Shown here: positions 1 through 64,000 of the stretch, piece by piece
How the letters are laid out: every line of letters starts with the position of its first letter
Position numbering within the stretch: the first letter of the stretch is position 1
Origin: Iphione sp. A-MEVVRFRX5
Lineage: Eukaryota
Assembly (NCBI GenBank): GCA_976226885.1
Contig: OZ320316.1
Coordinates: 76,942,001-77,006,000 of the forward strand
Reading direction: 5' to 3'
Length of the DNA stretch: 64,000 bases
Notes under the pieces: model-generated
Databases searched by the model: none
Told to the model about the DNA's origin: nothing
Seen by the model: only the letters and a program-made list of their open reading frames with translations
Translations under genes and position numbers: made by a program

Positions 1-913
1 TCCGAGGGGAGCGCCAGGTGCTTCCCGTTATCTACCTAGAATACATCTTACAGCAGGTCCTAGCAGCGTCACCGGTGGTGTGACGTCATAAAGATTTTGC
101 ATACAGCCATGATTAATAAGATGATGGCACCATGAACAAGTCGCCCACTTCGTCCCTGGTCTGGGACACTAACAGGCCTGGAGGGCTGGCGAACATAAGT
201 AAATTAAAAAATATATACTTCATCAGCTCTTTACATGTAAGAGAAATGTACAACAGTGGTTATGGTGAGAGAGTTTTGGCTCTGTTGGTATCGGCACCAT
301 ATACAAAAATATACAATGCACCTTCTTTTCTTCATTTTGGAGCGAAGCCCTCATCTGCAGAACCTATGGTCCTAGGTCCTATCTACAACAGGATACAGGA
401 ATACATACATTTGGGACAAACCCTGTCCTATTTCATGTTCAATCTCTGAACTGGACAACCGTCACATTCGACAGGAAGTATAACATAGTCCAAATCATTA
501 TGGTCAGTTTGATGTCATGTTATCGACTGAATTTACTGAGATTTAAGTAGCAGACGGTAGCGTCTAATTAGATTCACAATCAGTACTGTACACTGTTCTC
601 AATCAACAGCCATGCGTTTCAGTGATTTTCAGTCATACATAAGTGGTCAAAAACGCAATGCCATTTACAGTGTTTACATTAAAAAAATCTTTTTCACAGA
701 TTTGATCACTGGTGCTAGAGGAAAAGGCACATTTAATGTAAGTGTAATTATAAAAACAAAACAAATAGTATATGACCACCTCTGAAATACTGAAGGTCAC
801 TTCTTCATACTATCTTTGATCAAGCTCAACATTAGCATTCATTCGTCACATCCGGCTCAATCAGTCTTTCGATCCTTGCGTGCCGAGGTACGTCTCCCCT
901 CATCAGCCGTCGA

Positions 914-1212
914 TCACTTCCGGTCCTCAGACGTCTTCTTGCGGACCGAGGAACTCGGCTTGGGTATGCGCGACAGGCCTGACTTGCCCGGCGTGCCCAC
1001 CGGCACTGTGCGCACCTGCGTCTGGTGCGTCTGGTAGGTGACCGTGGTGTTCTGGCGGCCGCCGGCCGTGCGCGTCTCCGTCTTCACCGTGGTGAATATC
1101 TCCGGCTCGCCGCCCTCTGACACGTCCGAGCAGGCGCTGGGCGGCCGGCTGCTGCGGCTGCTCGCCCGACTGCTTGGACGGCTGCTCGTGCGGCTCGGCG
1201 TGCTCGCCCCGC
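914..1212 (-). CDS. MACF1: Terminal coding exon: GSR-like repeats and SxIP (SRIP at 962-973), stop TGA
   Basis: TTCTTCACCGCAG|GC, phase 1; [28 protein letters not shown]...SGLSRIPKP. Confidence 0.93.
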
Positions 1213-1779
1213 CTGCGGTGAAGAAAGAAACCAAGTTCGAGACATAATGATGAACCCATCGCATGCAGTGGGATGAGATTTGTATGGGCCACTACTATCG
1301 GACGTTTTTAACAGGTAGTGGAAAAAGCGTCAGTCCTGGGACATCAAAGACAATGGTGGTGTAGTGATAACATTTCATATTACACAAGCACCTTCGGCGC
1401 CTGCTTTCCTACACACCAACGCAACAAACTGGGCATGGGGATACACATCTCACTATAGGCCTATATCGTGATATTTCTGCCATTTTGCTAGCCGGAACTA
1501 TTTTCAGGTGACAATTTATTACACAACATATATAAAACGTTGCCCAAAAGTAGATCTGGCCATGGGGAAGGAGATCTCACACAGATGTGAGTTACCACAG
1601 GATGATATCGTTTTTTATCATGACATAGGCCTAAGTAGCGTGTGAAGTGTTGCAAAAGAAGACATATTTTATAATTTTATCTTAATTAATACCACTTAAA
1701 GTAGAACCAGAATCTTACATAGCACTATGTTCTCAGTGTATCCCTATGGTGATTTTTAAACAAACAAAATGACAGCTGT

Positions 1780-1832
<53 letters not shown>

Positions 1833-1835
1833 GAC

Positions 1836-1866
<31 letters not shown>

Positions 1867-37800: not shown

Positions 37801-40800
37801 CTGTAATATTTTGTAAGTGTTAAAAATAATATTGTAGACCCAACATATTCCACTTACAGTAAGACGAATCAAGACAATTTGAGGTCTTTTTACCCTTGCC
37901 GTTGTCTCCACTAAAACATATCAGCCATGATCTAAATGTGAGAAAATTCACATTAAGCGAACGAATTTCTCTCATCTGGAAACACCGAATATGGCTCTTC
38001 TAAATGTTAAAAAAATAATCGGCTTCATTTCAATGGAGACAATGACATTACAATGCACGTAACTATAATTCAATTTTGGCGTTGTGTAACATAACAGTCA
38101 GTCAAAATGTAATGCATTATGAATTCCGTTTCGTATAGGTAGTTTTAATGTGAGTGCGACTGTTTTTGAATGTTCAGGATTTAATGATTCACCAGGTCTC
38201 TTTGGGATTATTCATGCATAACAATCAAAATTTTTGCCACTTCAATCGGGCATGCTGATTATATCAGGGGTGATTCATTTAGTAAATCTTCATGCTTATG
38301 AACAATGTCAGGCTATCCACAATTCAAGAATCTAACACATTGGAGGGCTTAGGCAAACTCAATTCTAAGAATCTACAAAAAAGCATTCTACTAAAAGCTC
38401 TAATCTTTACTAAGGGTGCGACTTGGTTTTCTCCTTTTTGTTTAAAACTTCATATATATCTAAATGCGTATACTGGTACATGCATAATATCCACCCTACA
38501 GAATAACTATGACAGGTATTTCAGTTTGATATTGTGAAACGATTAGGAGAAGACCACACGCGACCGCGACCAAATATACATGAATTACCTATAACTAAAA
38601 TCAATAGATGAAACCAACAAATAAACATTTTGTACAGGTCAACACAAAGGTAGCGCCAGGTGTGCACCCAACAGCTAACTTCATGAACCAATCACAGAAC
38701 CGAGACACTTCGCCTGGCATGCCGTGTTCTTTGATAGGAGAAACATTGGTAACCTCGGGCAGCAGGGTGACTAACCCATGCCCGATGTGACCGACAGGAC
38801 GCACACAAAATAAGAAAAGGGGCCAAACACACGTAGGAAAATGGCCACCTTAACATCTACAGCAAGCAGCCGGCGTAGGCACGTGGATCGTACAGAGTGG
38901 ACGGTGTTAGCTGGGTTAACAGGTCCTAGCCTCTTATGAGATTATTGGTTTTCGCTGAGCTCCTCACTGCCTTAGGATTCTACCCCCATCTGCTCACTGG
39001 CTCTAGGAGAGGGACGATATCTTAAAAGGAGTAGGGGAGCATAACTTGTGGTAGGAGCCGGTCGTTACCTGGCGTGCTCTTTCTCTTTCTGGACTGGTGG
39101 CCGGACTCGGCTTCTGACCAACCACAAAGGCCACGTCGGCTTCTGGCCGCACACTCCCGACTTGGAATGATACGCCTTCTTGTGGGCCCACTTCTACACT
39201 ATCAATGACTGTCCCTGCAACCTCGTGGGCAGCAGGCAGAGCCTGGGCCGGCGACATACTGTCGATGGATTTGGCCAGGGTGCTGTCACTAGACTGTGGT
39301 GTAGTGAAACCGACGGAGATATCCTTGGTGACGTCCATCTGTTGCTCAAGTCCAGCAGTTTGAGGTAGTGGAGTCTGGGGCACGAAGGCCCCTCGGACAA
39401 TGTCCGTCTCGACTACCTTTTCGGGCGATACATCGTGTTTTCGAGGAGCCTCAAGAAGACCGGCCGTAATTGCAGCTGCTAGGTCCATTTGTTCTCCAGT
39501 GATTGGGTTGGTGTACAGACCACTTGTAGGGTTATAGTGCCCTAATTCTATAGCATCATTGATGGACAGGCGGTCAGGGATCTGGGGGGTATCATCATTT
39601 GTTTCTCGAATTAAGCCCATATCCCTCGATTGAGATAGTGGTATCATGTCACCAGTACTAGGGTCCTTCATCATACCACTACTTGGTGTAATCAACCCCT
39701 TTTTGATTGCCTCCCTAAGGGATATAAGTCGGCCTGACTCCGGGTCAAAAATCTGAGGAGTGGTGATGTCCAGGAGGCCTTTTGCAATAGCCTCAGCTAT
39801 GGTATACTTTTCACCAGCAGATGGACCCTTGATTGTGCCGGATTTTGGATCAAGGATGCCACTATCAATAGCCTCTGTTAGACTGAGACCCCTTCTTCGA
39901 CTATCTTTCCCCACTGCTCTTCTACGTCTTTCTTTCTCTAACTCGAGATCTTCAGGCTCTTTAATCAAGCCAGTCTCTAATGCCCTGTCTAATGGTATAG
40001 CCTTCTGGGTTATGGGGTCCTGCAAACACCCTGATTCGCTGTCGATAAGACCTACTTGTAGAGCTCCATTAAGGGACAAGACCCTATCTGTTTTAGGATC
40101 TAAGACCTGTGGAATATCCCCATCAAGAACATTTGATTTCACAGCTTCTAATAAAGTCACTTTAGTCCCTGTCCCAGGATCGGTAACACTGCCACTTTTC
40201 ACGTCAAAGCATCCCCTCTGCAGTGCTTCTGATAGTAACAATCCAAGTTCTGATTTTCTTTCTGTTCCCGAAATTTCACCTTTAACCTCTGAGCCAACTA
40301 CTTCCCCTTCCTTTTTATGCTCGTAGGAAAGATCACCTACAACTTCTTCTGTGGGTTGCTCAGGCGCTCCTACACTGCTGACATCTTTTGGTACCTTCTG
40401 TTCTGCAGGCACCTCCTCTAGCAAACCTGCACTGACTGCTTCACTAATACTAGACGTTTGATGTGAGACAGGATCGTTGAATCTGCCCGCTGACAGGTCA
40501 AGATATCCCAGGCCAATTGCCTCTGTGAATGTTAAGCCTGGTTTGCCTTCAACTGTTGCTGCAACGTCTTTACGTTTATCAACATCTACAGACTCTACAC
40601 CGGAAGTGATCTTTTCACCTTGATCTTTAATGTCAGACTCTATATTCCCTTCTACCATGCCTGGTTCACGTGTAGAATCCCTGGAGAATGTACCCTCCTT
40701 CATGTCACTCGGGACTTTCATACTAGGTTCAGCGCTGTGGTCCGATGAAAGGATTTCCTCGGATTTAGGCAGAATTTCTGCAACAGAGGTGTCTGTCTGT

Positions 40801-43800
40801 TCATCGTCAACGAGAACACCTGTCTTAAAATCAATGAGGCCTTGATCGAGGGCGTCTATTAGAGGCATTGATCTCTTCGTCTTCGGATTAGTTACAGTCG
40901 AGTCACCATTCAGCAGGCCATTTATTACAGCATTTGGTATTGAATATTGTTTCCCTGTTTCTGGATCAACTATCATACCCGTGCTTCCGTCCAACAGACC
41001 GAGTTCAATTGCTTTAGCAAGGCTTAGACCTCTGTGTGACTCCACAGGAACAATGTTACCATTTGCCCGCGCTGTGTCCAGGTATAACCTTTTTCCCGTA
41101 GTTGGATCTCTCATTGTTCCCATTCTACCACTGATGACTCCCTTATCAATCGCCTCACGAAGGCCTATCACATCACCACTTGCTGGATCCACAACCTCTG
41201 GCTTAGAACCATCAAGAAGGCCACAGTTAACAGCTTCTTCCACTGTCAGTAACTTTCCGCTTCTCGTATCCTGTATCTTGCCAGACTCCATGTCGTACAA
41301 ATTTTGATCGAGAATATCACAAACCGTAAGACCCGGTTTGACCTGCGCAGCAACAATCATTCCCTTTTTCTGTGCTTTACCAAACGGAATGCCCTGGTCT
41401 GTGACAGGATCTTTCACGAGGCCAGCTGACGAATCTATGAAGTCAGTTCTTAAAGCATCTCTTAGGCTAAGAATATCTCCCGATAAGGGGTCTACAATGG
41501 CGGAGGCAGTCTCCGACAACAAGCCATTAGCTGCAGCCTCAGCAACAGTACACTGCTCTCCCGTCACAGGATGCCGAAGCATTCCTTTTACAGGGTCTAG
41601 TATGCCTTGGTCTAAAGCCTCCTCTAACGTTAAGTTTTGTGCTTTTTCATCCGAACTCGTGTCATTACCACTAGTTTTCTCTTCTGGGGTGGCTGATACC
41701 AAATCAACAGGCCATGACTGAGATGTTTCAGGGATAGAAATTGCAGTACCCTTTATTAAAGCTTCAGCCAGAGTCATATCCTTACCTGTCACTGGATCTG
41801 TGACTTTATTCGTTTTCTTGTCAATTGTACCTTTCGCTATCGCATCATTCAAACTTATCTGTTCGCCCTTTGTGTTATCGATGATACAGGGTGTACTGCC
41901 ATCAAGGAAACCAGATTGGATCGCATCGACCACGCTGATGTCCTTTCCACTCCTAGGGTCTATTATCTGGCCCGTGTTAGGATTGATTAGATCCTTTTCT
42001 ATGACCTCTGTTACAGTTATAGCTGGCTTTATAAATGCTTCCTCAGGGAGTGCCTTTCTAAGCATCTCTATGATGCTGATTTCCTTTCCAGTGTTTGGAT
42101 CGATGATTTGTCCGGTTTCTTCATTGATCAAGCCCAGATGAATGGCCTTATTCAAAGTGATGCCTTCTCCAGTTCTTCCATCATAGAAACACGGTATGCT
42201 ACCATCCACTAGGCCTAATGCAGCTGCTTCAGAAAGATTATGTTCTTTACCAGTCTTAGGATCTCTTACCTTCCCTGTTTTGGGATCTATCAATCCTTCA
42301 GTTAGGCCCATTTTCAGTAAAGTTCCTAGTACAACTTCCTTTCCAGTCACTGGGTCTTGAGCTTTGCCTGTTTCACCATCTATGATGCCTCCCTTGACTG
42401 CCTCATTCAAACTGATTTTATCCCCAGTTCTTCTATCTTGAAAACATGGTACATTACCATCGATAAGACCTAATGCAATTGCTTGAGAGAGACTGTATTC
42501 TTTACCATTCACAGGATCTGTTATCATGCCTGTTATTGGATTTATCAATCCCTTTTCTAATACTTCTGTAATGGTCATGCCTGGTCTCTTGGGCTCTTCT
42601 TCTTCAATGAGGACTTTCTTCACTAATTCAGCTAATGTCACTTCTTTTCCAGTTGTTGGATCTTGACACTTTCCTGTCTCACCATCTACAATGCCTTTCT
42701 TGATTGTCTCATTCAAACTAATTTCATCTCCAGTTCTTCGATCATGAATACAAGGTGCATTACCATCCACAAGGCCTAATGCAATTGCTTGAGAGAGACT
42801 GTATTCTTTACCATTCACAGGATCTGTTATCATGCCTGTTATAGGATTTATCAATCCCTTCTCTAATACTTCTGTAATGGTCATTGCTGGTTTCTTGGGC
42901 TCTTCTTCTTCAACGAGGTCTTCCTTCACTAATTCAGCTAATGTCACTTCTTTTCCAGTTGTTGGGTCTTGATACTTTCCTGCCTCACCATCTACAACGC
43001 CTTTCTTGATTGCCTCATTCACACTGATTTCATCTCCAGTTCTTCTATCATGAATACATGGTGCATTACCATCCACAAGGCCTAATGCAATTGCTTGAGA
43101 GAGACTGTATTCTTTACCATTCACAGGATCAGTTATCATGCCTGTTATAGGATTTATCAATCCCTTCTCTAATACTTCTGTAATGGTCATTACTGGTCTC
43201 TTGGGCTCTTCTTCTTCAATGAGGTCTTCCTTCACTAATTCAGCTAATGTCACTTCTTTTCCAGTTGTTGGGTCTTGACACTTTCCTGTCTCACCATCTA
43301 CAACACCTTTCTTGATTGCCTCATTCAAACTAATTTCATCCTCAGTTCTTCTATCATGAATACATGGCGCACTACCATCCACAAGGCCTAATGCAATTGC
43401 TTGAGAGAGACTGTATTCTTTACCATTCACAGGATCTGTTATCATGCCTGTTATTGGATTTATCAATCCCTTTTCTAATACTTCTGTAATGGTCATGCCT
43501 GGTCTCTTGAGCTCTTCTTCTTCAATGAGGTCTTCCTTCACTAATTCAGCTAATGTCACTTCTTTTCCAGTTGTTGGATCTTGACACTTTCCTGTCTCAC
43601 CATCTACAACACTTTTCTTGATTGCCTCATTCAAACTAATTTCATCTCCAGTTCTTCTATCATGAATACAAGGTGCATTACCATCCACAAGGCCTAATGC
43701 AATTGCTTGAGAGAGACTGTATTCTTTACCATTCACAGGATCTGTTATCATGCCTGTTATAGGATTTATCAATCCCTTCTCTAATACTTCTGTTACAGTC

Positions 43801-55800: not shown

Positions 55801-58800
55801 ATATTTATGACTTTTCCAGTCGCGGGATCTAGTATCCTTTCGCTGATGGCTTCCTCCAGCGTCAATCGATCACCAGTAGCTGGGTCTACGATGTATGATT
55901 GTGGGTCAAGTACGCCGAGATCAATTGCCTTTCCTAATGGCACTGCCTCTTCGGATATTGGATCAATCACGGCATTAGTCTCTGAATTGAGAAGGCCTTG
56001 ACGAACGGCCTCATCGACTGTCATCCCTCCCTTTCGCCCAGCGCGCTTCCTTCGTGACTTGGTGGAATGTCTCAGAGAGAACTTCTCCCCGGTGTGAACA
56101 TTGATGACATTGCCATGCCGTGCATCCAGCACGCCACATGCTGTGGCTCGCGCTAGTGCCATCTCCTCTCCTGTGGCGGGATCTATGATGGTCGACTGAG
56201 TATCGATCAGTCCTTCCTCCATGGCTTCCTCCAGAGTAAAGAAACGGCGACAAGTTGGGTCGAGGAATTTGCATGTCACCTCATTGAAGAGACCTATGTC
56301 GATTGCTGTGGCAATGGACATTGGCCGGGCAATCATTATTCCACGATCTAATGCTTCTGTAAGTGGTATTAACTCGTGTGATGCCCTGTCCTTTAGGTAT
56401 CCGGTTTTCCCATTCACCATACCTGCTTGAATGGATTCTTTCAGATTAATTACAGCTCCACTAGCGGGATCATTGAGAACTACTGATGTGTCATCCAGTA
56501 CACCTCGGTCAATTGCTTGTTTCAGGGTGATTTCTTCTTCAGTGCTTGGGTCAATGAACTGGCCTGTGTCTACGTTGTACAGGCCATCATCGATCATATT
56601 CAGAAGTGACATTGGCTCTGCCAGCTGTTTACCTTCGTACAAATAACCCAACTCCACTGCTTTCTCCAACGGAAACTCTGTACCCTTTGAATCGGTTATG
56701 ATGCCTTGTGTGAAATCTACCAGTCCCATTTCTTTGAGTACACCCAATGGGACTATTTTGCCGGATGAAGGGTCTTGGACCATAGCGTTTTCAATGTTGA
56801 TAAGCCCTGAATCCAAAGCGGCATTCATTGTCATTCTCTGCCCCGTGCTGGGATCTGAAACCAAGTTCTTCTCCGGAATGTATATGCCACTTTTTATTGC
56901 ATCCACTATTGACACTACAAATTCTTTTCCAACCTGAGCTACACTATCTGGATGTCCCCCAGCCTCTCTGAGCAGGTCCTCTGATGAGTCCTGAATGTCC
57001 CCTCCGACAATGTCTTTTGGGGTGATGACTATACCTCGCTCAACAGCGTCTGATATTGACACCATTGCCCCCGTTGACGGGTCCTTGACCACACACTTTT
57101 CTGTGTCCACCAATCCCATGGATATGGCTTCATCTAATGACATTGTACTTCCCGTGAGAGGATCGTAGAGCGACGCTTGAGAGTCTAAAAGCTCTTTTAT
57201 CATTTCAAGCAGGTTCTCCTTTTCCTCCCCCATTGGTGTGAAATCTTCAAATTCTGTCTGTTCCGTCATTTGTGAGTCTTCCATCCGTTCATCCCTGTCA
57301 ACAATCATCTTCTGGGCTACTGCCTCTTGGAATCCTATGGGTCTCCCCACAGTTACGTCCATCAACTCCCCAGATTTGGGATCGACAAGTCCCGTGTCTA
57401 TGGCCTCTGAGAGAGGGACCTCTCTATTTGTTGACGGGTCAATCACCACCATCGATTTGGGATCGACTACTTTGGCATCGAGAGCTTCTTTAAAGGTTAA
57501 CGACCTACCTGTACTGGGAACCTTCATCGTTTTCGACTTACCATCAAAATAGCTTTCTGCAGCTTTCTTTATTAAAAGTGGCGCCAAAATCGGTGCCGCA
57601 ACCACGGCAAGCAAACCCTTCTTCACCGAATCTGCAAAAGAAACACTACTCCCTGTCCTGGTATTAGATATTCTACCTGTCTCTGGATCCATTATACCCC
57701 GTTCGAATGCTTCAGTCAGAGCTATATCCTCCCCACTGTTGGGATCATGAACCTTAACTGAAGACCTATCTACTATACCTTTCTCAATGGCTTGGAGCAA
57801 CGGATATGTTCTACCTGATGTTTCTTCTGTGACAAGCCCTGCATCAGCATCATACTGGCCGCTTCGTGCAAGTTGTTCAAGTGTGGGTACACTAGATATT
57901 TCCACAATAAGTCCTTGCTTATAGGCCTCCGCAACAGGCATAGGCTGACCTGTTTGTGTATTATATACGACGCCTTCCTCTATATTTAACACACCTCTAG
58001 CTACTGCCTCCTTCAAATCAAGTCTCTCACCAGTAGATGGGTCGGAGACCGCTGATGACTGGGCATTGATATAACCTTTATCTATGGCATCCTTTAATGG
58101 CATCTCCTCGCCTGACACCGGGTCTGTAAACCTACCGGTGTTAGTATCTATACTGCCTGATTCTAAAGCCTCAGCTAAGGACACACTTTCCTCTGGGGTT
58201 AGGGACTTACGCTTGGGAATGACTGGTATGGACAAGTCATCTCTTGTATAAGTGGTCTGTGAAACAACTGCCTCAGCCGGATCACGTTTCAGGACCTTAG
58301 CAGGAGGCTCGGCCGTATCCTCCGTACTCTCTATGATATGGAGAGGAGTGAGCTCCTTGGTTTCATGGGACACCGTGGATATATCCGACAGGGGTCGACC
58401 TTGCTCCGTGGAGGCCTGTACCAAACCAATCTGTGCGGTCTCCCCTGCAGACAAAGTTTTAGTGTCCACTGCAGGGATTAAGTCACTAGTCGGTGTATCT
58501 GTGATCCCTTGCTCTGCAGCAGTGGCTGTTTCACGCTGCTCCTTGATCAGAGGCACCTCCGGTTTAACCTGTTCTAATTCCTGTAATGCAAAGTCATTAA
58601 GTGCAACGAAAACAGTCAAGGAATATGAAAAACAGTTCACGTGGGAGTAAGTGGAGAGGTTAATTTCCTTGAAAATAAAAAGAAGCTCTTTTAACATTTT
58701 AAAGTGAAATGTCAATCACTGCATTTGTTTACACACAGATGTGCCAAGTCTGGTAGTGACATACTAAGAATACAAAACGCAAGTTCACTACAAGAATCAG

Positions 58801-61800
58801 CACAACTGGAAATGGTGTTCTTACCCTCTCGAAGATGGAGGACACAGCAGTGGAAACCCCAGAAACCTGGTCATCGTGCGAATCGTGATCATAAGGTGTG
58901 GCGATGTGACGATCCACTGCTTCGGAAAGGGACAGAGCTTCGCCGGTTCTGATGTTAACAACTCTTTCAGGTCCAGCCATCTGGAAGCCTGGCTGAATCA
59001 CGTAGCTTGTGGGGCCCTCGCTGGATGTCTCACTCAATGGCCGCTCTGCTTTTACTGGAGCCGCTTTGATAAGTTCCTCTTCCTGTTTCTGTACATCGGA
59101 TGAATCCATGGGCTCCGAGAACCCATTTGTCTCAGTTCTGGCTGGAGTGACTGTGGCAGTCAAAGTGTCTTTGGCTGGTTTTTCTTCAGTTTTGCCATTT
59201 AGGAGGAGGTTCTCATCCTTACTCTTTTGCCTTTTCGGCCTGGGTGGTGGTGTTGGCGGCGCTGCTCTTTTAGGGGATGTCGGTGTCTCTTTGAGTTTCC
59301 CACCTGCACTCGGTAGTTTGGTAGTTATCAGGCCACGCTTAACTGCTTCGTCTAGAGGTAACACGCGGCCAGTGTTCGGGTCCGAAAACTCACAAGTCAC
59401 TTGATTGTAAAGTCCTCTTTCCAGGGCATCCGCAAAAGACACGCTACGCAGGCTCTCGTCTTCATCAGGTGTAGAGGTCCTGTCTGGAACTGATATGAAG
59501 CCCAGCAGGATTGCCTCATCAACAGTTATCTTTTGGCCTGTCTTGGGGTTGATCATCGTCCCGGTGGCAGCATCTACAATGCCACGTGCAAGAGCTTCCT
59601 GTAATGGTACCCTACCCCCTTCTTCGGTTAATATGAGCAGGCCTGCATCAGCCGCCTCTTCCAGTGGGAACCTATCGCCTGTCAGAGGGTTGAAATACTC
59701 CCGTGTTTGCAGGTCAATAAGGCCACGGGCCAGAGCATCTTGGAATGTGAGTTCACTCTCCAGGGTCTCATCAGTGGAGGAGGGAGGATAATCCTCTCTA
59801 CTTAATTCAGTAGATTCTGATGGCGGTGGCTCAACGCTGCTATCGTACTTCTCCGTGTCAGTATCCACACCATCAGCTACTTTTCTCAAAACTTCTGAAT
59901 CTTCTTGAATTCTCTTCGGCTTTTCATCTTTTGACGTTCCGTTCTGTACTGGTGTTTCTATGAATGATTGTTTTTTGCCATCCTGATAATCCTTCAAGTC
60001 ACTTTGCTCAACAAGCGAGTCTTGTTGGGCTTCTGAGTATAACAACCCTCCGCCTTTATCAGCGATTGCTCCTCCTGTGTCTGTTTTCTCTGCGATGGCA
60101 TCCTCCTTAGAGGAAGACTGCCACGAGGATTCAGGAGCCTCGCCATCCCTCACCTTGGAGGGGCCTGAGCCTATATCAGGTGGCGGGGGCTGTTCTCCCG
60201 TATCCTCACGGTGGTGCGGTGTGGAGAGGCCGGCCTCGCGAAAAAACGACTGCGACTCCATCTTGTAGGACTTGGAAACCTGCTGGCTGCTGACTTGCTG
60301 GCTGCTGATGTGCTGGCCTTCCTGGGCGCCGGTCTTCACATGTCTCTGCTCAATAGCTCTTTCCAGTGGCATCCTTTCGCCTGTGACCACATTGATGAAT
60401 TCTTCTTTCTCAGTGTCCAGCATATGCCTTTGAATAGCTTCTGTCACGGACAGTTCTCGTCCGTTCATTGGGTCGATAACACCGGTGACATGGACGGATT
60501 TCGCTGGTTTGGGTGTTTGCGCGCGCTGGAGTGTCTCATGCCCTTTAGTGAGGGCCTTGATGTAACCCCTTTCTATTGCTTCTTGGAATGCCATCGTTTC
60601 ACCTGACACGGTATCTACATAAGTACCGCTGTTAGGGTTCAGAATTCCCCTTCTAACGGCCTCCATCAAAGCAACTTCTTCTCCTGTTTTCCTATCAATC
60701 ACAGACGAGATATGCATCACTTCGGTTTCCTTCTTAGTTTGAATTGTTGCATAGGTGGTAGCATCCTGTGGCAGGTCATCATAGTCGGGTTCTTCCACCT
60801 CTTCTGCCTTGATGAATCCCTGCACGATGGCAGCCCTGATACTAATACTTCTGGCTGTGATGGGATCAATGTACATGCCTTGTGTTTTGTTGATAAGACC
60901 ACGACGTTCGGCCTCTACAGGGTCATACCACACGCCGGAGTTGGGATCCCTCACTGACTTCAGTGAGTACACGGTGGGGAGGGGCATGATTCCTGACTCA
61001 ATTATGGCCGATTTCCGTCCAACTTGATCAAGCGTCTCCGTGATTACTAAGCCTTTGTGGATTGCCAGTGAAATCGGTATGATTTCATCGGTTTCTAGAT
61101 TGACAAACTGGTTTTTCTCACGATCAACGATTTTGTGCCGGACTGCATCAGCGATGGGGATTTCCTCCCCCGTACGTGGATCAATCACAGACTTGATGGC
61201 GTAGGATTTTGTTTCTCTTCCTATCGCAGTAGAGGAAGGAAGTGTACCTTCGTGAGCAATCACTAGTCCACAATCTATGGCATCTTGAATGCTCATTGTG
61301 CGATTGTTCTTTTTGTCAACATACTTCGATACGTCTTTGTCAAGCAGACCACGCTGAATAGCTTGGTCTACGGGTACCTTTTCGTCTGTTCGAGTATCGT
61401 AGGCAGCTACAACTGTATACGATTTTGTCTCCATAATGGCTGTGGCAGAGAGGACCGTGCCAGCTTCGGAGCCGTCCATTTCATCGGCAATGATCAGACC
61501 CTGGTCATAGGCTTCGTGAATAGGGATACTATCACCAGTCTGAGGGTTGACATACACTCCTCGGTCAACGTCTAGAATGCCTCTGTTTGTGGCTGACGTG
61601 GGGCTGAGCTTCTCCTTTGTCATTGGGTCGATGACCGCCTTGATGTTGAACGTTTGGCGTCCACGTGTAATGTCTACACTCTTCTTCAGCTCTGTCTCCT
61701 CAGTGGTGACCGATCTAGACTGGATAAAGCCCTCCCTTACAGCATCAGCAAAAGTCATTGAATGGCCACTTCGGTTATCGATGTAAAGCTGTTGGTCTGG

Positions 61801-64000
61801 CTTCAGGATTCCTTTCTCCACTGCACTCTTTGACGTCTCCCACTGTCCTGTTTGGCGATTCAGAACAGAGATGATGCCAGACAATCTTGAGTCTGGTGCA
61901 CCAGGGAAAGCTTCAAGCGTTACCACCGTCTCCTCAGTGATAACATATCCCTTCTCAATGGCAGAGAAGATGGACATGGCTTCCCCTGTATGTGGATTGA
62001 TGTAATCTCCTGTATTGGCATCAATTATGCCTCTGTCAATTGCTTCTTCTCGGGAGAGTTCTTTCCCAGTTACTGGATCGACAACCTTCTGAATTTTATC
62101 CATTTCATTTTGAGCCCTACTGCCGCCTATGATGAATTCTTCCTTGGTACGTACAGTGTCAATCACACGGCCCTTGATGAGATTTTCTTCGTATGCCTGG
62201 CCGATGGAAATGGAGTCACCAGTCTCTCTATTTTGATACATGCTCCGGTCTTTGCTGATGATACCGTCGGCAATAGCTCGGTCAAGGTGTGCCTTCTTTC
62301 CAGTGACGGGATGTATGACAGCCTCGACGGCCAACTTGATCTTCTCACGAATGATGACTTTCCTGAGGACTGGGGCATCACTGCCCGGAACCTCGGCCAC
62401 TACCCCTTCACGGAGAGCCTCACGCAAGGGCCTCATCCTGTTGGAGACAGGGTCCACATAGCGGCCAGTAGGTCCCATTATGCCATGTTGTACAGCAGTG
62501 AGAAGGTCTGTTGGTTCGCCACCATTAGGATCGTGCACCTCTGCAGATTTAGAGTCCAGGACACCTTTCTCTAGCGCCTGCTTCAACGTCATGCTCTGGT
62601 CTGTCTGTGGGTCAACAAAGGTTCCCTTTTCCGTATCGACTAGACCCTGGCGAATGGCCCTCATCAGCGAGAGGCCTTTCTTTTGATCTACCCTTGACGT
62701 TGTCTCCTGAACACGTGTGAATTCCAGGATGTCTCTATCTGGAGCATCTGAGGCAAGGTCGTCACTAGAGAGCAGTCGCTCACTGGATCTGGACCGAGAG
62801 CGTTCACGTCTTCCCTTCTTAATGGCCTCCTTTACTGCCAATCCTGCCATGACGGGAGCACCAATCAAGGCAAGAAGGCCAAGTTTGGCCGCCTTTTGGA
62901 TTGTCATCTTCCGACCAGTACTGTGCTGGATGAATTGGCCGGTTTTGGGATCCATTCTGCCTTCTCTAATCGCTTGTTCTAGTGACATCATCGTGAACGT
63001 TTCTGTGTCGTACAAAATAGACTCCTTATCGATAAACCCTTTATCCATGGCTTCCTGTAGGCTCATCTTTCGTCCTGTATTCGGATCAGTAAATACTCCC
63101 GTGTTTTCATCAAAGTAGCCTTTGGTGATAGCCTCTGTCAGCGCCATACTGGGTTGGGAGCTGTCTGTTTCTTCTGCTAACGCATCGATCATGTCTTGCC
63201 GGATAGCGTCGGTGATTGGCATATGGGTGCCTGTAGTCGGGTCTAGATAGGTGCCGCGTTTGATATCGATGAAACCCTTTTCCACCGCTTCAGAGAACGA
63301 CATGCTATGATGCTGTGAGGACCTTTTCTCGAGTGTTGTCTCTTCAGTAGTTATTACGCTCAGACCACCAGCAGGGAGTACAACGTAGCCTTTTCGGATC
63401 GCTGCATCAAGCGGCATAAGTACCCCTGTTATTGGCTCCATGAAGGTGTTCTGGCGAACATCAATGAGTCCCTCGGCGAGAGCATCTTCGAACCGCATAC
63501 CGTCGACGCCCTCCTCTGGTTGCTCTTCCACTTCAGGTGCTATGATGAAGCCATACTGTATAGCATCCAATAGAGTCATTACCTCGCCGGTGTAGCGGTC
63601 CGTGAATGTACCCGTCTTGGCATCGATCAAACCATCAGTGAGGGCCTCATTGAAGGTAACAGCTTTGGTGGGTTTTGGCTCGGTCTTCACAGTAACTGTG
63701 GGTTTCTCTTCAACAAGATAGTCTTCTCGTGACTCAAGTAGCCCGAGTTGCACGGCACGTCTGATGTCCATAGTTTCACCTGTTCGTGGGTTGGTGTACA
63801 TGCCAGTTCTTACGTCTATGTAGCCTTTCTCAATGGCCTCCTGAACACCCATTGTGTCTTTCCCTTTGATACCGTGCTCGGGAACCAGTCCCTCCAGACA
63901 AAACTCACTGAAGCTCATCAGCTTCCCTGTTGCAGTGTTTCGTACGTCGCCTGTGTTGGGATCAAGGATTCCCATCCGCATAGCATCAGTAAGGGTCAGG
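914..64000 (-). CDS. MACF1: Spectraplakin gene, 3' part (multi-exon, 5'-truncated by window): plakin-repeat giant exons, spectrin rod, 2 EF-hands, GAR, GSR/SxIP tail
   Basis: 49 exons join in one frame with GT(GC)-AG introns. Hallmarks: [84 protein letters not shown]. Symbol means co-ortholog of MACF1/DST (fly shot, worm vab-10). Confidence 0.97.
1782..1867 (+). repeat. (GA)n microsatellite grading into (GAGACA)n
   Basis: Read directly; lies in last intron. Confidence 0.97.
2120..2267 (-). CDS. MACF1: Tail exon ([13 protein letters not shown]...GIHSP)
   Basis: Not in ORF track; CTCTTCCAG|ATA ... G|GTAAGG; 148 nt, phase 0-1. Confidence 0.85.
2855..2887 (-). CDS. MACF1: 33-nt microexon encoding [11 protein letters not shown] (SxIP motif), probable cassette
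   Basis: TGCGTGCTCTCTCTGTCCAG|TCA ... AAG|GTAAGG; phase 0-0, no stop. Confidence 0.75.
3348..3538 (-). CDS. MACF1: Post-GAR exon ([15 protein letters not shown]...GPITK)
   Basis: CTTTACAG|CC ... AAG|GTGAGA; 191 nt, phase 1-0. Confidence 0.95.
4568..4627 (-). CDS. Candidate 60-nt basic cassette exon after GAR ([20 protein letters not shown])
   Basis: About 40-nt pyrimidine tract, CCTGAAAG|TT ... T|GTAGGT; phase 1-1. Confidence 0.45.
4868..4891 (-). CDS. Candidate 24-nt microexon after GAR (EHRHFLLT)
   Basis: TTTCTTGAAGCAG|AA ... A|GTAAGT; phase 1-1. Confidence 0.35.
5510..5632 (-). CDS. Candidate cassette exon after GAR (123 nt; 27 nt if inner donor after 5606 is used)
   Basis: Long C/T tract, GACGCAG|AG; phase-1 donors G|GTAACG and G|GTGAGA; open frame [14 protein letters not shown]...QIAAA. 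Confidence 0.45.
6901..7018 (-). CDS. MACF1: GAR domain exon 2, DPC Zn ligands
   Basis: TGTGTAG|TTC ... AGAG|GTGAGT; [39 protein letters not shown]; phase 0-1. Confidence 0.98.
7487..7603 (-). CDS. MACF1: GAR (GAS2) domain exon 1, CxC Zn ligands
   Basis: CATACAG|AAG ... CGA|GTAAGT; [31 protein letters not shown]; 117 nt. Confidence 0.95.
7896..8008 (-). CDS. MACF1: EF-hand 2 exon
   Basis: Not in ORF track; CTCTATAG|AG ... CAG|GTAGGA; [38 protein letters not shown]; phase 1-0. Confidence 0.96.
9509..9532 (-). CDS. Candidate 24-nt microexon between EF-hands (TETMGKSH)
   Basis: GATTTCAG|CT ... ATG|GTAAGT; phase 1-1. Confidence 0.3.
9862..10024 (-). CDS. MACF1: EF-hand 1 exon
   Basis: TGTCGCAG|TCG ... 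A|GTAAGT; 163 nt, phase 0-1; loop [12 protein letters not shown]. Confidence 0.96.
10235..10376 (-). CDS. MACF1: Exon ending the rod ([36 protein letters not shown])
   Basis: TGCGCAG|G ... GAG|GTACAT; 142 nt, phase 2-0; resembles MACF1 [26 protein letters not shown]. Confidence 0.93.
10724..10857 (-). CDS. MACF1: Last spectrin repeat / linker exon ([18 protein letters not shown]...RRP)
   Basis: Not in ORF track; CTTTACAG|ACA ... TC|GTAAGT; 134 nt, phase 0-2. Confidence 0.9.
10970..11088. mobile_element. MITE-like palindromic element, about 45-bp imperfect terminal inverted repeats
   Basis: Left CTTTGTACCAGGATAAGGACACAGGTGTCTCACTGAGATACAGCC pairs with right GGTTGTATCTCAGGTAGACACCTTGTGTCCTGTCCTGGTACTAAAG; no clear TSD. 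Confidence 0.65.
11150..11338 (-). CDS. MACF1: Spectrin-rod exon (VTAWAR...HDHQ)
   Basis: CTCTTTCAG|GTA ... CAG|GTGCGC; 189 nt, phase 0-0. Confidence 0.92.
11571..11714 (-). CDS. MACF1: Spectrin-rod exon (AFLGDL...RWEE)
   Basis: GATAAAG|GCA ... GAG|GTGAGT; 144 nt; [22 protein letters not shown]. Confidence 0.93.
12308..12791 (-). CDS. MACF1: Spectrin-rod exon ([15 protein letters not shown]...EEHK)
   Basis: TTTTATAG|A ... AAG|GTAAAG; 484 nt, phase 2-0; PVHGDLDTV. Confidence 0.95.
13082..13368 (-). CDS. MACF1: Spectrin-rod exon (FHDAWR...KSVD)
   Basis: CTTCCACAG|TTC ... AG|GTGAGC; 287 nt, phase 0-2. Confidence 0.94.
13649..14011 (-). CDS. MACF1: Spectrin-rod exon (AKLEEA...EAKQ)
   Basis: GGTTAG|GCC ... 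CAG|GTGAGC; 363 nt; [39 protein letters not shown]. Confidence 0.94.
14381..14551 (-). CDS. MACF1: Spectrin-rod exon (EVYNEL...ADRK)
   Basis: ATTTCAG|GAG ... AAG|GTAAAG; 171 nt, phase 0-0. Confidence 0.92.
14709..14837 (-). CDS. MACF1: Spectrin-rod exon (AKSFHD...ERFM)
   Basis: CTTTTCAG|GCA ... ATG|GTAAGT; 129 nt; [14 protein letters not shown]. Confidence 0.94.
15051..15248 (-). CDS. MACF1: Spectrin-rod exon (ILMNDI...SLRE)
   Basis: TGTTCCAG|ATC ... GAG|GTAAGC; 198 nt, phase 0-0. Confidence 0.93.
15575..15730 (-). CDS. MACF1: Spectrin-rod exon (TKLQSA...AKHR)
   Basis: CATTGCAG|ACC ... AGG|GTAAGT; 156 nt; [18 protein letters not shown]...[13 protein letters not shown]. Confidence 0.94.
15863..16058. 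mobile_element. Second, longer copy of the palindromic family with an internal 47-bp stem
   Basis: Shares GTATCTCAGGTAGACACCTTG(T/C)GTCC(T/A)GTCCTGGTACTAAAG with the first copy; arms 15899-15945 and 15975-16021 differ at 3 of 47 positions. Confidence 0.7.
17380..17652 (-). CDS. MACF1: Spectrin-rod exon (KILVWL...SDRK)
   Basis: CTTCCTGCAG|AAA ... AAG|GTACTC; 273 nt, phase 0-0. Confidence 0.92.
17917..18141 (-). CDS. MACF1: Spectrin-rod exon (ALREDM...EELM)
   Basis: TGTGCAG|GCT ... ATG|GTAAGT; 225 nt, phase 0-0. Confidence 0.93.
18506..18732 (-). CDS. MACF1: Spectrin-rod exon (ELRDKV...DALE)
   Basis: CCTGACAG|AG ... GAG|GTAGGA; 227 nt, phase 1-0. Confidence 0.9.
18927..19079 (+). repeat. About 150-bp polypurine low-complexity tract
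   Basis: Almost exclusively G/A on the plus strand. Confidence 0.9.
19100..19325 (-). CDS. MACF1: Spectrin-rod exon (FSDKLE...EAAK)
   Basis: TGTGCAG|TTC ... AAAG|GTGATA; 226 nt, phase 0-1. Confidence 0.9.
19652..19858 (-). CDS. MACF1: Spectrin-rod exon (LLKQSI...QTSE)
   Basis: ATTCCAG|TTG ... GAG|GTGACT; 207 nt, phase 0-0. Confidence 0.92.
20164..20490 (-). CDS. MACF1: Spectrin-rod exon (TINDDI...DAIK)
   Basis: CATGTAG|ACA ... AAG|GTGAGC; 327 nt, phase 0-0. Confidence 0.92.
21001..21042 (-). CDS. Candidate 42-nt cassette exon ([14 protein letters not shown])
   Basis: Two CTAAC motifs upstream, GAACAG|GCC ... GCG|GTGAGC; phase 0-0. Confidence 0.4.
21570..21689 (-). CDS. MACF1: Spectrin-rod exon (LIHDID...RDHK)
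   Basis: GTTGCAG|CTC ... AAG|GTGAGT; 120 nt, phase 0-0. Confidence 0.92.
22356..22367 (-). CDS. Candidate 12-nt microexon (TYDV)
   Basis: CTGTCTCTGGACCGCTCCATATCAG|ACGTATGACGTT|GTAAGT; phase 0-0. Confidence 0.4.
22892..23098 (-). CDS. MACF1: Spectrin-rod exon (KLQEHL...KSVE)
   Basis: TTTATACAG|AAA ... GAG|GTGAGC; 207 nt, phase 0-0. Confidence 0.92.
23320..23955 (-). CDS. MACF1: Spectrin-rod exon (FLQRML...KEVE)
   Basis: CTCATCAG|TTC ... GAG|GTAGGT; 636 nt, phase 0-0. Confidence 0.93.
24231..24563 (-). CDS. MACF1: Spectrin-rod exon (RFCKEE...QEQK)
   Basis: CTTACAG|CGG ... AAG|GTGAGT; 333 nt; MACF1-like [41 protein letters not shown]. Confidence 0.95.
24947..25159 (-). CDS. MACF1: Spectrin-rod exon (VDTLWK...EDFK)
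   Basis: TTTATAG|GTA ... AAG|GTAAGG; 213 nt, phase 0-0. Confidence 0.9.
25651..25764 (-). CDS. MACF1: Spectrin-rod exon (SYKNSL...ALDQ)
   Basis: Not in ORF track; TTTCATTTCAG|TCA ... CAG|GTGAGG; 114 nt, phase 0-0. Confidence 0.88.
25968..26081 (-). CDS. MACF1: Spectrin-rod exon (SDLRAV...EDIQ)
   Basis: Not in ORF track; TGTCTAG|TCT ... CAG|GTAGGC; 114 nt, phase 0-0. Confidence 0.87.
26263..26478 (-). CDS. MACF1: Spectrin-rod exon (AMQEEL...SQFQ)
   Basis: AACTAG|GCC ... CAG|GTGCGC; 216 nt, phase 0-0. Confidence 0.9.
26711..26880 (-). CDS. MACF1: Spectrin-rod exon (GVLDRV...DKVK)
   Basis: TTCTACAG|GC ... AAG|GTGAAT; 170 nt, phase 1-0. Confidence 0.9.
27245..27395 (-). CDS. MACF1: Spectrin-rod exon (GMQTEL...RLNA)
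   Basis: CCTTCAG|GGC ... GCAG|GTATGG; 151 nt, phase 0-1. Confidence 0.9.
27754..28083 (-). CDS. MACF1: Spectrin-rod exon (ALQNEI...KEAQ)
   Basis: CTTAAAG|GCT ... CAG|GTAGGA; 330 nt, phase 0-0. Confidence 0.9.
28395..28561 (-). CDS. MACF1: Spectrin-rod exon (DDRRHQL...RDSE)
   Basis: TTTGTAG|AT ... GAG|GTCCGT; 167 nt, phase 1-0. Confidence 0.88.
28818..29313 (-). CDS. MACF1: Spectrin-rod exon (LLQEEM...RKKL)
   Basis: CTTCTTCAG|CTT ... CTAG|GTGAGA; 496 nt, phase 0-1. Confidence 0.92.
29597..29796 (-). CDS. MACF1: Spectrin-rod exon (EKRWKS...QQVQ)
   Basis: TTGCAG|AG ... CAG|GTAAGT; 200 nt, phase 1-0. Confidence 0.92.
30060..30189 (-). CDS. MACF1: Spectrin-rod exon ([11 protein letters not shown]...LKQL)
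   Basis: Not in ORF track; GAATAG|GCA ... G|GTATGT; 130 nt, phase 0-1. Confidence 0.88.
30560..30798 (-). CDS. MACF1: Spectrin-rod exon (DMSEVQQQL...LKDYQ), GC donor
   Basis: CTCTAG|AT ... CAG|GCATGC; 239 nt, phase 1-0 required by next exon. Confidence 0.8.
31531..31695 (-). CDS. MACF1: Ser/Thr-rich insert exon within spectrin repeat (probable cassette)
   Basis: CTAAC branch-like motif, GTTTCAG|AG ... GATG|GTTAGT; 165 nt, phase 1-1; [20 protein letters not shown]9[10 protein letters not shown]. Confidence 0.75.
31610..31636 (-). repeat. Coding (ACC)n triplet repeat, poly-Thr x9
   Basis: ACC ACT (ACC)7 inside exon 31531-31695. Confidence 0.9.
32515..32629 (-). CDS. MACF1: Spectrin-rod exon ([38 protein letters not shown])
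   Basis: Not in ORF track; GGCAG|CCG ... AGAA|GTAGGT, phase 0-1; alternative phase-1 donor G|GTGAGG after 32545. Confidence 0.85.
32890..34287 (-). CDS. MACF1: Large spectrin-rod exon (AFLDDV...EEIQ), about 4 repeats
   Basis: CTCTCACCTAG|GCA ... CAG|GTAATC; 1,398 nt, phase 0-0; repeated spectrin helix-A Trp. Confidence 0.93.
34679..34701 (+). repeat. Short imperfect (TG)n microsatellite
   Basis: gtgtgtgtatgtgtgtgtgtgtg. Confidence 0.8.
35089..35271 (-). CDS. MACF1: Spectrin-rod exon (LLGESE...DQHK)
   Basis: TTTTACAG|TTG ... AAG|GTGAGA; 183 nt, phase 0-0. Confidence 0.9.
35495..35650 (-). CDS. MACF1: Spectrin-rod exon (ALYSEI...KLES)
   Basis: GGCAG|GCT ... TCG|GTTTGT (weaker donor); 156 nt, phase 0-0. 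Confidence 0.8.
35843..35989 (-). CDS. MACF1: Spectrin-rod exon (VKLDEL...DDQK)
   Basis: TTATTAG|GTT ... AAG|GTACGC; 147 nt, phase 0-0. Confidence 0.85.
36872..36937 (+). repeat. 33-bp tandem duplication (2 copies), intronic
   Basis: GCTAGTTCCCTCTTTCAGGGGTCTTAGCAAAAC followed by GCTAGTTCCCTCTTTTAGGGGTCTTAGCCAAAC. Confidence 0.9.
39069..58580 (-). CDS. MACF1: Giant exon B (19,512 nt, 6,504 aa): dozens of plakin-like repeat units
   Basis: Uninterrupted 6,570-aa ORF; acceptor TTTGCATTACAG|GAA (ELEQ), donor CGCCAG|GTAACG; phase 0-0. Confidence 0.9.
42330..43802 (-). repeat. Coding tandem array, 306-bp (102-aa) unit, about 5 near-identical copies (fifth diverges in its second half)
   Basis: Equivalent positions at 42570, 42876, 43182, 43488, 43794; unit [41 protein letters not shown]...EEEEPKRP. 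Confidence 0.95.
58825..63999 (-). CDS. MACF1: Giant exon A (partial, >=1,725 aa): plakin-like repeats and low-complexity linkers
   Basis: Frame open to window edge ([14 protein letters not shown]...); repeated DPxTG / EAIxxGLID motifs; donor GAGAGG|GTAAGA, phase 0. Confidence 0.9.

What the first reader, a model, noticed from the sequence alone, without database searches (positions are those of the whole stretch)
39069..64000. Twin giant exons split by a 244-bp intron give a >=8,229-aa insert and a protein over 11,900 aa
Seen: exon A (>=1,725 codons) and exon B (6,504 codons) are separated by intron 58581-58824, which has an in-frame stop and shifts frame if retained. With 3,687 downstream aa the window encodes about 11,900 aa, before adding the CH and plakin domains. 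Inference: a protein well over 1.2 MDa. If exon A also starts in phase 0, A and B could be included independently as a modular length switch.
Basis: partly seen in the sequence, partly recalled or inferred. Interest (0 to 1): 0.7.

Follow-up and report, generated by a model that had tools for sequence, protein, structure and literature searches.

The report
Giant two-exon plakin-repeat insert of spectraplakin
Two enormous coding exons (11.8 kb and 19.5 kb) of a cytoskeleton-linker gene, probably from an annelid worm, together encode a 10,425-residue run of plakin repeats, three times the fruit-fly counterpart; the gene could make a protein of about 15,400 residues, but no RNA data show that it does.

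Summary
On the minus strand, exon B (39069-58580, 6,504 codons) and exon A are open. They are separated by a 244-nt GT-AG intron with stops in all three frames. Exon A runs past the window to extended coordinate 70587, so it has 3,921 codons, not 1,725. Both exons are phase 0-0, and so are the flanking exons.

Both exons encode plectin/plakin repeats (Pfam PF00681, E 1e-105 to 1e-225). CH, spectrin, EF-hand and GAS2 exons lie on the same strand in family order, so the gene is a spectraplakin (shot/MACF1/dystonin kind).

The insert is 10,425 aa (1.13 MDa). An all-exon protein would be about 15,400 aa (about 1.7 MDa).

A and B are not duplicates (about 23% identity). In three relatives the equivalent of the A/B boundary lies inside one uninterrupted reading frame. 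The intron therefore probably split one older giant exon.

This is the known internal plakin-repeat insert of spectraplakins, which is one 10.5-kb exon in Drosophila, at about three times the size.

The "modular length switch" is allowed by the phases but has no evidence. No RNA run was listed, so all splicing is inferred. The scan had already noted exon B on this same DNA.

The parts
58825..64000 (-). Exon A, in-window part. The whole exon is 58825-70587 in extended window coordinates (G000:C10:77000825-77012587): 11,763 nt, 3,921 codons, phase 0-0. It holds plakin repeats plus a non-repeat head of about 170 aa.
   Evidence: The frame is open to the TGA at 70603-70605, with the acceptor at 70587. 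Pfam Plectin E 2.5e-105 on the in-window part. It is collinear with Paralvinella P0001 residues 1256-4593 at 32% identity. The junction GLYFP|YAVEDV... matches P0001 without a gap.
58581..58824 (-). 244-nt intron between exons A and B (GTAAGA...TTACAG)
   Evidence: Sequence read. Stops in all three frames. GC 0.357. Single copy in the genome, so not a repeated element. It lies in a non-repeat linker of about 200 aa.
39069..58580 (-). Exon B: 19,512 nt, 6,504 codons, phase 0-0, plakin repeats
   Evidence: Pfam Plectin E 1e-225 and 5e-185 on its two halves. Residues 54-2900 are collinear with relatives P0001, P0002 and P0005.
42334..43970 (-). Recent tandem expansion inside exon B: 306-nt (102-aa) unit, 5.3 copies, 91% matches
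   Evidence: TRF. dN/dS between copies is 0.17-0.50, so the copies are under purifying selection in this frame.
35990..39068 (-). 3,079-nt intron between exon B and the first rod exon. Read-through from exon B would stop after 21 codons.
   Evidence: No homology-supported exon inside it. No AATAAA; the first ATTAAA is 883 nt past the donor.
35843..35989 (-). First exon after the insert (49 codons, phase 0-0, [10 protein letters not shown]...)
   Evidence: Acceptor TTATTAG|GTT and donor AAG|GTACGC. It aligns to the stretch that follows the plakin repeats in scallop P0082 (3866-3912), cricket P0010, ant P0013 and P0006.
3336..35842 (-). Remaining downstream exons: spectrin-repeat rod, EF-hands, GAS2/GAR domain and tail (about 3,600-3,700 aa together with the exon above)
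   Evidence: tblastn blocks. Pfam Spectrin E 3e-18 and 8e-18, EF-hand E 1e-7, GAS2 E 7e-7 on single exons.

Best explanation
This is the internal plakin-repeat region (PRR) of a spectraplakin gene (shot/MACF1/dystonin kind), probably from an annelid. The gene lies on the minus strand and spans at least 115 kb.

Gene order: CH-domain exons, plakin-domain exons, exon A (3,921 codons), a 244-nt intron, exon B (6,504 codons), a 3.1-kb intron, then spectrin rod, EF-hands and GAS2 domain.

Shown:
- both exons are open, code for plakin repeats and are under purifying selection;
- every boundary is phase 0 with canonical splice signals;
- A and B are collinear with single proteins or single reading frames of relatives.

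Inferred:
- When the insert is used, the small intron is simply removed. A and B then form one 10,425-aa (1.13 MDa) array of roughly 150-210 hairpin-plus-helix units. This array sits between the plakin domain and the rod and gives a protein of about 15,400 aa.
- As in fly and mammals, most transcripts probably skip the whole insert, splicing donor 70867 to acceptor 35989, to give an ordinary isoform of about 4,900 aa.
- The A/B intron is a lineage-specific split of an ancestral single giant exon, not a designed hinge.
- The array probably acts as a very long, multivalent spacer or docking region at junctions or on intermediate filaments.
For: - Open frames and splice sites.
- Plectin repeat, Pfam E 1e-105 to 1e-225. 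In this genome the repeat is confined to this gene and one other small locus.
- Family domains on the same strand in family order (CH, spectrin, EF-hand, GAS2).
- The best relatives are spectraplakins. The top one is Paralvinella palmiformis P0001 (CH + plakin domain + a PRR spanning at least 6,463 aa).
- P0002 is a single 4,360-aa reading frame that covers A 1504-3423 and B 54-1827. A-tail and B-head map 85 residues apart in it. P0005 is a single 6,207-aa frame that covers A 7-3264 and B 556-2929.
- In L006 the equivalent of A's end lies inside a continuous frame.
- dN/dS is 0.17-0.5 among the newest repeat copies.
- The first rod exon matches the segment that follows the PRR in scallop, cricket and ant models.
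Against: - No transcript evidence of any kind. No RNA run was listed, so the reads tool could not be used.
- Inclusion, skipping and the A-B join rest on sequence signals and homology alone.
- Alignment across the last 75 aa of A and the first 53 aa of B is too weak to place the boundary to the residue in relatives.
- Relatives cover only the first 2,900-4,000 aa of exon B well, so the second half of B has weaker comparative support.
- The total length of about 15,400 aa adds an N-terminal part estimated only from collinearity with P0001 (about 1,250 aa) and a downstream part not rebuilt exon by exon.
Confidence: 0.8

Rival explanations
1. Modular length switch. Exons A and B are included independently, giving four rod lengths: none, A only (+3,921 aa), B only (+6,504 aa), or A+B (+10,425 aa).
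For: All six relevant boundaries are phase 0, so every combination stays in frame. The intron sits in a non-repeat linker, so either half would end cleanly.
Against: Phase 0 at every boundary is also what a simple whole-insert cassette needs. In three relatives the A/B boundary lies inside one continuous reading frame, so independent use cannot be ancestral. A 244-nt intron between two exons of more than 10 kb is most simply removed by intron definition whenever both are transcribed (inference). No RNA data.
Confidence: 0.12
2. Plakin-repeat-terminal isoforms, like C. elegans VAB-10A, plectin or BPAG1e. Transcripts would end after exon B, by read-through into the 3.1-kb intron with a stop after 21 codons. 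Or they would end after exon A, by retention of the 244-nt intron with a stop after 31 codons. Either gives an ABD-plakin-PRR protein without rod or microtubule-binding end. These could exist alongside the main explanation.
For: In-frame stops follow both donors closely. In C. elegans the plakin-repeat exon encodes an alternative C-terminus (PMC2173965). The Paralvinella model P0001 ends inside the PRR.
Against: There is no AATAAA in the 3.1-kb intron; the nearest ATTAAA is 883 nt downstream. Both donors are good consensus sites. P0001's end may be a gene-model truncation. Scallop and insect models join the PRR to the rod.
Confidence: 0.2
3. The giant exons are evolutionary relics that are never, or almost never, included in mRNA, so the protein of about 15,400 aa does not exist.
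For: No expression data. PRR-containing isoforms are the minority in Drosophila (bioRxiv 10.1101/122010).
Against: 31,275 nt are free of stops (log10 P about -257 by chance). Order is conserved with relatives at 30-36% identity over thousands of residues. dN/dS is below 0.5 even among copies that are about 95% identical.
Confidence: 0.03

Closest known systems
Drosophila Short stop (shot) PRR-containing isoforms (Shot-PH; Roeper & Brown 2003, PMC2173965)
   Same: A giant coding exon of plakin repeats sits in the large intron between the plakin domain and the spectrin rod. Gene order is CH, plakin domain, PRR, rod, EF-hand, GAS2. The repeats are spaced singly rather than grouped into 4.5-repeat globular domains. 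The hydrophobic GLLAVVGAPVLAG-type motif is shared.
   Different: Fly: one exon of 10,497 nt, 33-40 repeats, largest isoform 8,846 aa. Here: two exons totalling 31,275 nt, about 150-210 repeat units, and a predicted maximum of about 15,400 aa. An extra 244-nt intron splits the array. Fly expression is shown; here none is.
Paralvinella palmiformis hypothetical protein LSH36_68g10066 (P0001, 7,866 aa) and unnamed giant reading frames in public assemblies (P0002, P0003, P0004, P0005)
   Same: These are the closest sequences. CH-domain exons are 53-92% identical to P0001 and plakin-domain exons 32-71%; the repeats are 30-36% identical. Order matches exon A and the first 2,700-2,900 aa of exon B. 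PRRs span at least 6,000 aa.
   Different: In P0002 and P0005 the A/B boundary equivalent lies inside a single reading frame, with no intron there. L006 has introns at other places. None of them is described in the searched literature. Their total PRR lengths are unknown because the models or frames are incomplete.
Mammalian MACF1b / dystonin-b internal PRR
   Same: An internal PRR is spliced in between the plakin domain and the rod (bioRxiv 10.1101/122010).
   Different: Mammals have about 20 (MACF1) or 9-11 (dystonin) repeats, organised as compact plakin repeat domains. Here there are about ten times more, and a two-unit model does not superpose on solved plakin repeat domains (TM 0.17, Z below 2).
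C. elegans VAB-10A
   Same: Plakin repeats are encoded by large exon(s) of the single spectraplakin gene (PMC2173965).
   Different: In the worm they form an alternative C-terminus. Here exon B ends in a consensus phase-0 donor, and the next exon is the rod.

Membership tests
Spectraplakin (shot / MACF1 / dystonin / VAB-10) | N-terminal calponin-homology actin-binding domain | tested here: met
   Exons at extended coordinates 106290-121574, same strand, are 53-92% identical to P0001 residues 61-262. Pfam CH E 7e-9 and 7e-5 on two of them.
Spectraplakin (shot / MACF1 / dystonin / VAB-10) | [quoted passage not shown] | tested here: met
   About 18 exons at extended coordinates 70837-86245 are collinear with P0001 residues 263-1265, the stretch for which Pfam lists plakin-domain families PF17902, PF21019 and PF21020. 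Pfam was not run on these exons directly.
Spectraplakin (shot / MACF1 / dystonin / VAB-10) | Spectrin-repeat rod followed by EF-hands and a GAS2/GAR microtubule-binding domain | tested here: met
   Pfam Spectrin E 3e-18 and 8e-18, EF-hand E 1e-7 and 7e-6, GAS2 E 7e-7 on exons at 32854-34272, 12308-12793, 7905-8042, 9863-10036 and 7487-7606. These are collinear with scallop P0082.
Spectraplakin (shot / MACF1 / dystonin / VAB-10) | All domains joined in one transcript or protein | not testable with these tools
   No RNA run was listed. Only the order, strand, phases and homology to annotated proteins support it.
Plakin (plectin) repeat, Pfam PF00681 | Sequence match to the 38-39-residue repeat profile above the curated cut-off | tested here: met
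   344, 730 and 599 bits against a cut-off of 20.5. A profile built from the exons themselves finds 155 (strict) to 212 (lenient) units.
Plakin repeat domain (compact 4.5-repeat globular module of desmoplakin, plectin, envoplakin) | Repeats pack into a globular module that superposes on solved plakin repeat domains | tested here: not met
   AlphaFold2 model of two 102-aa units: pLDDT 91, pTM 0.61. The top Foldseek hits are plakin repeat domains (4qmd, 5dzz, 1lm5, 2n03), but at E about 1e-3 with TM 0.13-0.17 and rmsd above 20 A. No VIA-align match at Z 2 or more. Only one 204-aa segment was tested.
Alternatively spliced internal PRR cassette (as in shot-PH, MACF1b) | Cassette flanked by same-phase boundaries, so that skipping keeps the frame | tested here: met
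   The upstream exon ends in phase 0 at 70867, A and B are each 0-0, and the next exon starts in phase 0 at 35989.
Alternatively spliced internal PRR cassette (as in shot-PH, MACF1b) | Both including and skipping transcripts observed | not testable with these tools
   No RNA runs listed.

The most novel reading that the evidence does not exclude
The all-exon isoform is really made. That would be a single polypeptide of about 15,400 aa and about 1.7 MDa, by far the largest spectraplakin or cytolinker, with a 1.1-MDa array of non-globular plakin-type units. In addition, the lineage-specific 244-nt intron would have turned one ancestral giant exon into two independently usable length modules (A only, B only, A+B).
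Probability: 0.1. Interest if true: 0.6.

Novelty: new member of a known kind. Interest (0 to 1): 0.4.

Why it matters
- Size. Internal plakin-repeat regions are the least understood part of spectraplakins. Here the region is about three times the fly's and about ten times the mammalian one. Relatives in public assemblies also carry arrays of at least 6,000 aa that the searched literature does not describe.
- Function. Arthropods lack cytoplasmic intermediate filaments (bioRxiv 10.1101/122010). The organism here could be used to ask whether a huge internal PRR binds them or serves as a junctional spacer, but whether it has such filaments was not settled.
- Splicing. Exon B, at 19.5 kb, is unusually long for a coding exon. 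The A/B pair is a natural case of a short intron sitting between two exons of more than 10 kb.
- Annotation. Gene finders are likely to break this locus into several genes.

Tried and rejected
- RNA evidence.
- Introner or transposon origin of the 244-nt intron. Rejected: it is single copy in the genome.
- 'Twin' exons as a recent duplication. Rejected: A against B is about 23% identical, no better than any repeat against any other.
- Other Pfam hits (RAMA, MEKHLA, OCRE, DUF5830, Rieske_2 and others). No single stretch passes on its own. I read them as cross-matches to the repeated motif.
- A shared intron in relatives. In L006 the interruptions lie elsewhere and include a mini-exon of about 110 nt. 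P0002 gave no DNA. P0001 and P0005 exceed the size limit of the contig look-up (for P0001).
- PRR-terminal isoform. There is no AATAAA after exon B. Kept only as a minor rival.
- Intermediate-filament genes. The genome has two strong and two weak IF-rod loci. Whether any is cytoplasmic was not resolved.
- Steps left out. The joined (spliced) A+B protein was not sent to any search or folding tool; all searches were made exon by exon, by reference. The two exon translations were placed end to end only inside one sandbox script, to count repeats.
- Not done. The organism was not identified. The downstream part was not rebuilt exon by exon.

Full report
**Observation**

The window holds two very long minus-strand open frames, 39003..58715 (6,570 aa) and 58729..63981 and beyond.

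Reading the junctions on the minus strand gives these sites:
- donor GAGAGG|GTAAGA, with the last base of exon A at 58825;
- acceptor TTGCATTACAG|GAA, with the first base of exon B at 58580;
- donor CCAG|GTAACG, with the last base of exon B at 39069.

The intron has stops in all three frames and is not a multiple of three. Its GC is 0.36, against 0.46-0.50 in the exons. It occurs once in the genome. At the local base composition, log10 of the chance of such open frames is about -160 for B and -97 for A. No N occurs in the stretches used.

**Exon A runs beyond the window**

The window is G000:C10:76942001-77006000. I fetched DNA beyond the window end. The exon A frame stays open up to a TGA at extended window coordinate 70603-70605. 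The only in-frame acceptor after that stop is TTCCTTGTTTTCAG|TATGCA, which puts the exon start at 70587.

Exon A is thus 58825-70587: 11,763 nt, 3,921 codons, phase 0 at both ends. The preceding exon ends ...GLYFP|GTAATT at 70867, also in phase 0. The join GLYFP + YAVEDVIPRIRTFRSELRML matches the Paralvinella protein P0001 (GLYFPHKVDDTLIRIRTYRSELRMV) without a gap. In relative P0005 the giant reading frame begins at the equivalent of exon A residue 7, so this exon start looks conserved.

After exon B comes a 3,079-nt intron. The next exon is 35843-35989, entered at TTATTAG|GTTAAG. It has 49 codons and is phase 0-0.

All boundaries are phase 0, so the frame is kept with A+B, A only, B only or neither.

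**What the exons encode**

All three searched pieces match the Pfam plectin/plakin repeat (PF00681) at E 2.5e-105, 1e-225 and 5e-185. A profile built from the exons themselves finds 155 units by a strict count and 212 by a lenient one. The consensus of that profile has the usual GLID..TG...DP.TG...(S/T)L.EAI form.

Across the genome, the repeat is found only in these two open frames and in one 559-aa frame on contig 15.

Exons A and B weigh 430 and 698 kDa and are acidic, with pI 5.2 and 4.6. The A/B intron falls in a non-repeat linker. The last repeat of A ends at residue 3895 of 3,921, and the first repeat of B starts at residue 134.

**The gene**

- CH-domain exons lie at extended coordinates 106290-121574. 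They are 53-92% identical to P0001, and two give Pfam CH hits.
- Plakin-domain exons lie at 70837-86245.
- Downstream of exon B lie spectrin-repeat exons, two EF-hand exons and a GAS2 exon, all on the minus strand in family order.

This is a spectraplakin. The first rod exon aligns to the stretch that follows the plakin repeats in scallop, cricket and ant proteins and in P0006.

Size estimate:
- The N-terminal part is about 1,250 aa, by collinearity with P0001.
- The downstream part is about 3,600-3,700 aa.
- An all-exon product would be about 1,250 + 3,921 + 6,504 + 3,690, or about 15,400 aa and about 1.7 MDa.

**Relatives**

Searching exon B by reference gave 113 hits, all spectraplakins or bare plakin-repeat frames. 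The best named one is a 7,866-aa hypothetical protein of the annelid Paralvinella palmiformis (P0001).

A and B are only about 23% identical to each other, so they are not twins by duplication. They are successive parts of one array:
- P0001 covers A 1-3414 and then B 286-2722.
- P0002 is a single uninterrupted 4,360-aa reading frame. It covers A 1504-3423 and then B 54-1827.
- P0005 is a single 6,207-aa frame. It covers A 7-3264 and then B 556-2929.

In P0002 the A-tail and B-head alignments end and start 85 residues apart, against 127 residues here. In L006 the equivalent of A's end also lies inside a continuous frame. The introns of that species lie elsewhere in the array.

The simplest reading is that a single ancestral giant exon was split by an intron in this lineage. 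The alternative is that the intron was lost three times.

Among the retrieved proteins, the repeat region spans at least 6,463 aa in Paralvinella, about 6,000 aa in P0005, and about 3,700-4,600 aa in arthropods. The search sees only proteins of 3,577-11,382 aa and scored only the 826 best candidates. I therefore cannot claim a record.

**Evidence that the exons are translated**

Besides the open frames and the conserved order, there is the only recent tandem expansion: a 306-nt unit in 5.3 copies at 42334-43970. It shows dN/dS of 0.17-0.50 between copies, including copies about 95% identical.

**Fold**

An AlphaFold2 model of two 102-aa units was built with 48 paralogous and orthologous segments as the alignment. 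It is confident (pLDDT 91, pTM 0.61) and consists of repeated beta-hairpins each followed by a short helix.

Foldseek ranks envoplakin, desmoplakin, plectin and periplakin repeat domains first. The scores are E about 1e-3, TM 0.13-0.17 and rmsd above 20 A. The rigid aligner finds nothing at Z of 2 or more.

So the local motif is plakin-like, but the tested segment does not form the compact 4.5-repeat domain. Roeper and Brown concluded the same for the fly repeats from sequence (PMC2173965).

**Comparison with what is known**

In Drosophila shot, one 10,497-nt exon with 33 plakin repeats lies between the plakin-like and spectrin-like parts of the gene. It is included by alternative splicing and gives isoforms up to 8,846 residues. 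In C. elegans the equivalent exon gives an alternative C-terminus (PMC2173965).

A review states that all spectraplakins splice in an internal PRR. It gives about 40 repeats for the fly, about 20 for MACF1 and 9-11 for dystonin, and says the function of internal PRRs is little known (bioRxiv 10.1101/122010).

No paper in the searched library holds both 'spectraplakin' and 'annelid'.

The finding is therefore a new and very large member of a known kind, not a new kind.

**How it most likely works**

The steps below are inferred, not shown.
- The donor at 70867 pairs with the exon A acceptor, or with the rod acceptor at 35989, which skips 34.9 kb.
- When the insert is entered, the 244-nt intron is removed, and A and B are read as one 10,425-aa array.
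- Independent use of A or B is possible by phase. It has no support and cannot be ancestral.
- Isoforms ending after A or B are possible, because stops follow both donors closely. There is no AATAAA after exon B.
- The genome has two strong and two weak intermediate-filament rod loci, so filament binding remains open.

**Limits**

- No RNA run was listed for this stretch, so read laying could not be used and no splice junction is observed.
- The joined A+B protein was not sent to any search or folding tool. All searches were made exon by exon, by reference. The two translations were placed end to end only inside one sandbox script, to count repeats.
- The scan had already noted exon B and its tandem array on this same DNA.

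Noticed in passing
window about 57560-57620 (-) (exon B residue 322); exon A residue 2570 at window about 62850-62880 (-); exon A residue 1816 at L002 about 2100-2150 (-): A strongly conserved hydrophobic motif, K-[LM]-G-L-L-A-V-V-G-A-P-V-L-A-G, occurs three times in the 10,425-aa array. Three of the four most hydrophobic 19-residue stretches of the array are these motifs. The same motif is present in the plakin-repeat regions of Paralvinella (three times), scallop, lobster, Drosophila and ant proteins. Its role (membrane contact, or packing between units?) is unknown to me.
   Followed up: partly
G000:C15:74626444-74626530 (-), outside the window: This is the only other plectin-repeat match in the genome, in a 559-aa open frame. 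It may be a second, small plakin-type gene.
   Followed up: no
window 42334-43970 (-): A 306-nt (102-aa) unit repeated 5.3 times at 91% identity is the only recent tandem expansion in the 25 kb searched. dN/dS between copies is 0.17-0.50. The array is therefore still growing by whole three-hairpin units.
   Followed up: yes
L006:8900-10000 (+) (ENA ERZ22147071 contig, unknown relative): In this relative the plakin-repeat array is interrupted at other places. There are two AT-rich GT-AG introns with a mini-exon of about 110 nt between them that codes for part of a repeat. Intron positions inside the array differ between lineages.
   Followed up: partly
extended window 70380 (-) (exon A, after codon 69), in L002 about 7380: A phase-0 donor-like site, AGTGAG|GTACAA, follows the conserved first 30 residues or so of exon A. 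In Drosophila a short exon made of the start of the giant exon is used in other isoforms (PMC2173965). Whether the same happens here is untested.
   Followed up: no
G000:C1:89140660-89164339 (+) and G000:C2:67810917-67824571 (+), outside the window: There are two clear intermediate-filament rod (PF00038) genes and two weak loci in the genome. I did not determine which are lamins and which, if any, are cytoplasmic.
   Followed up: no
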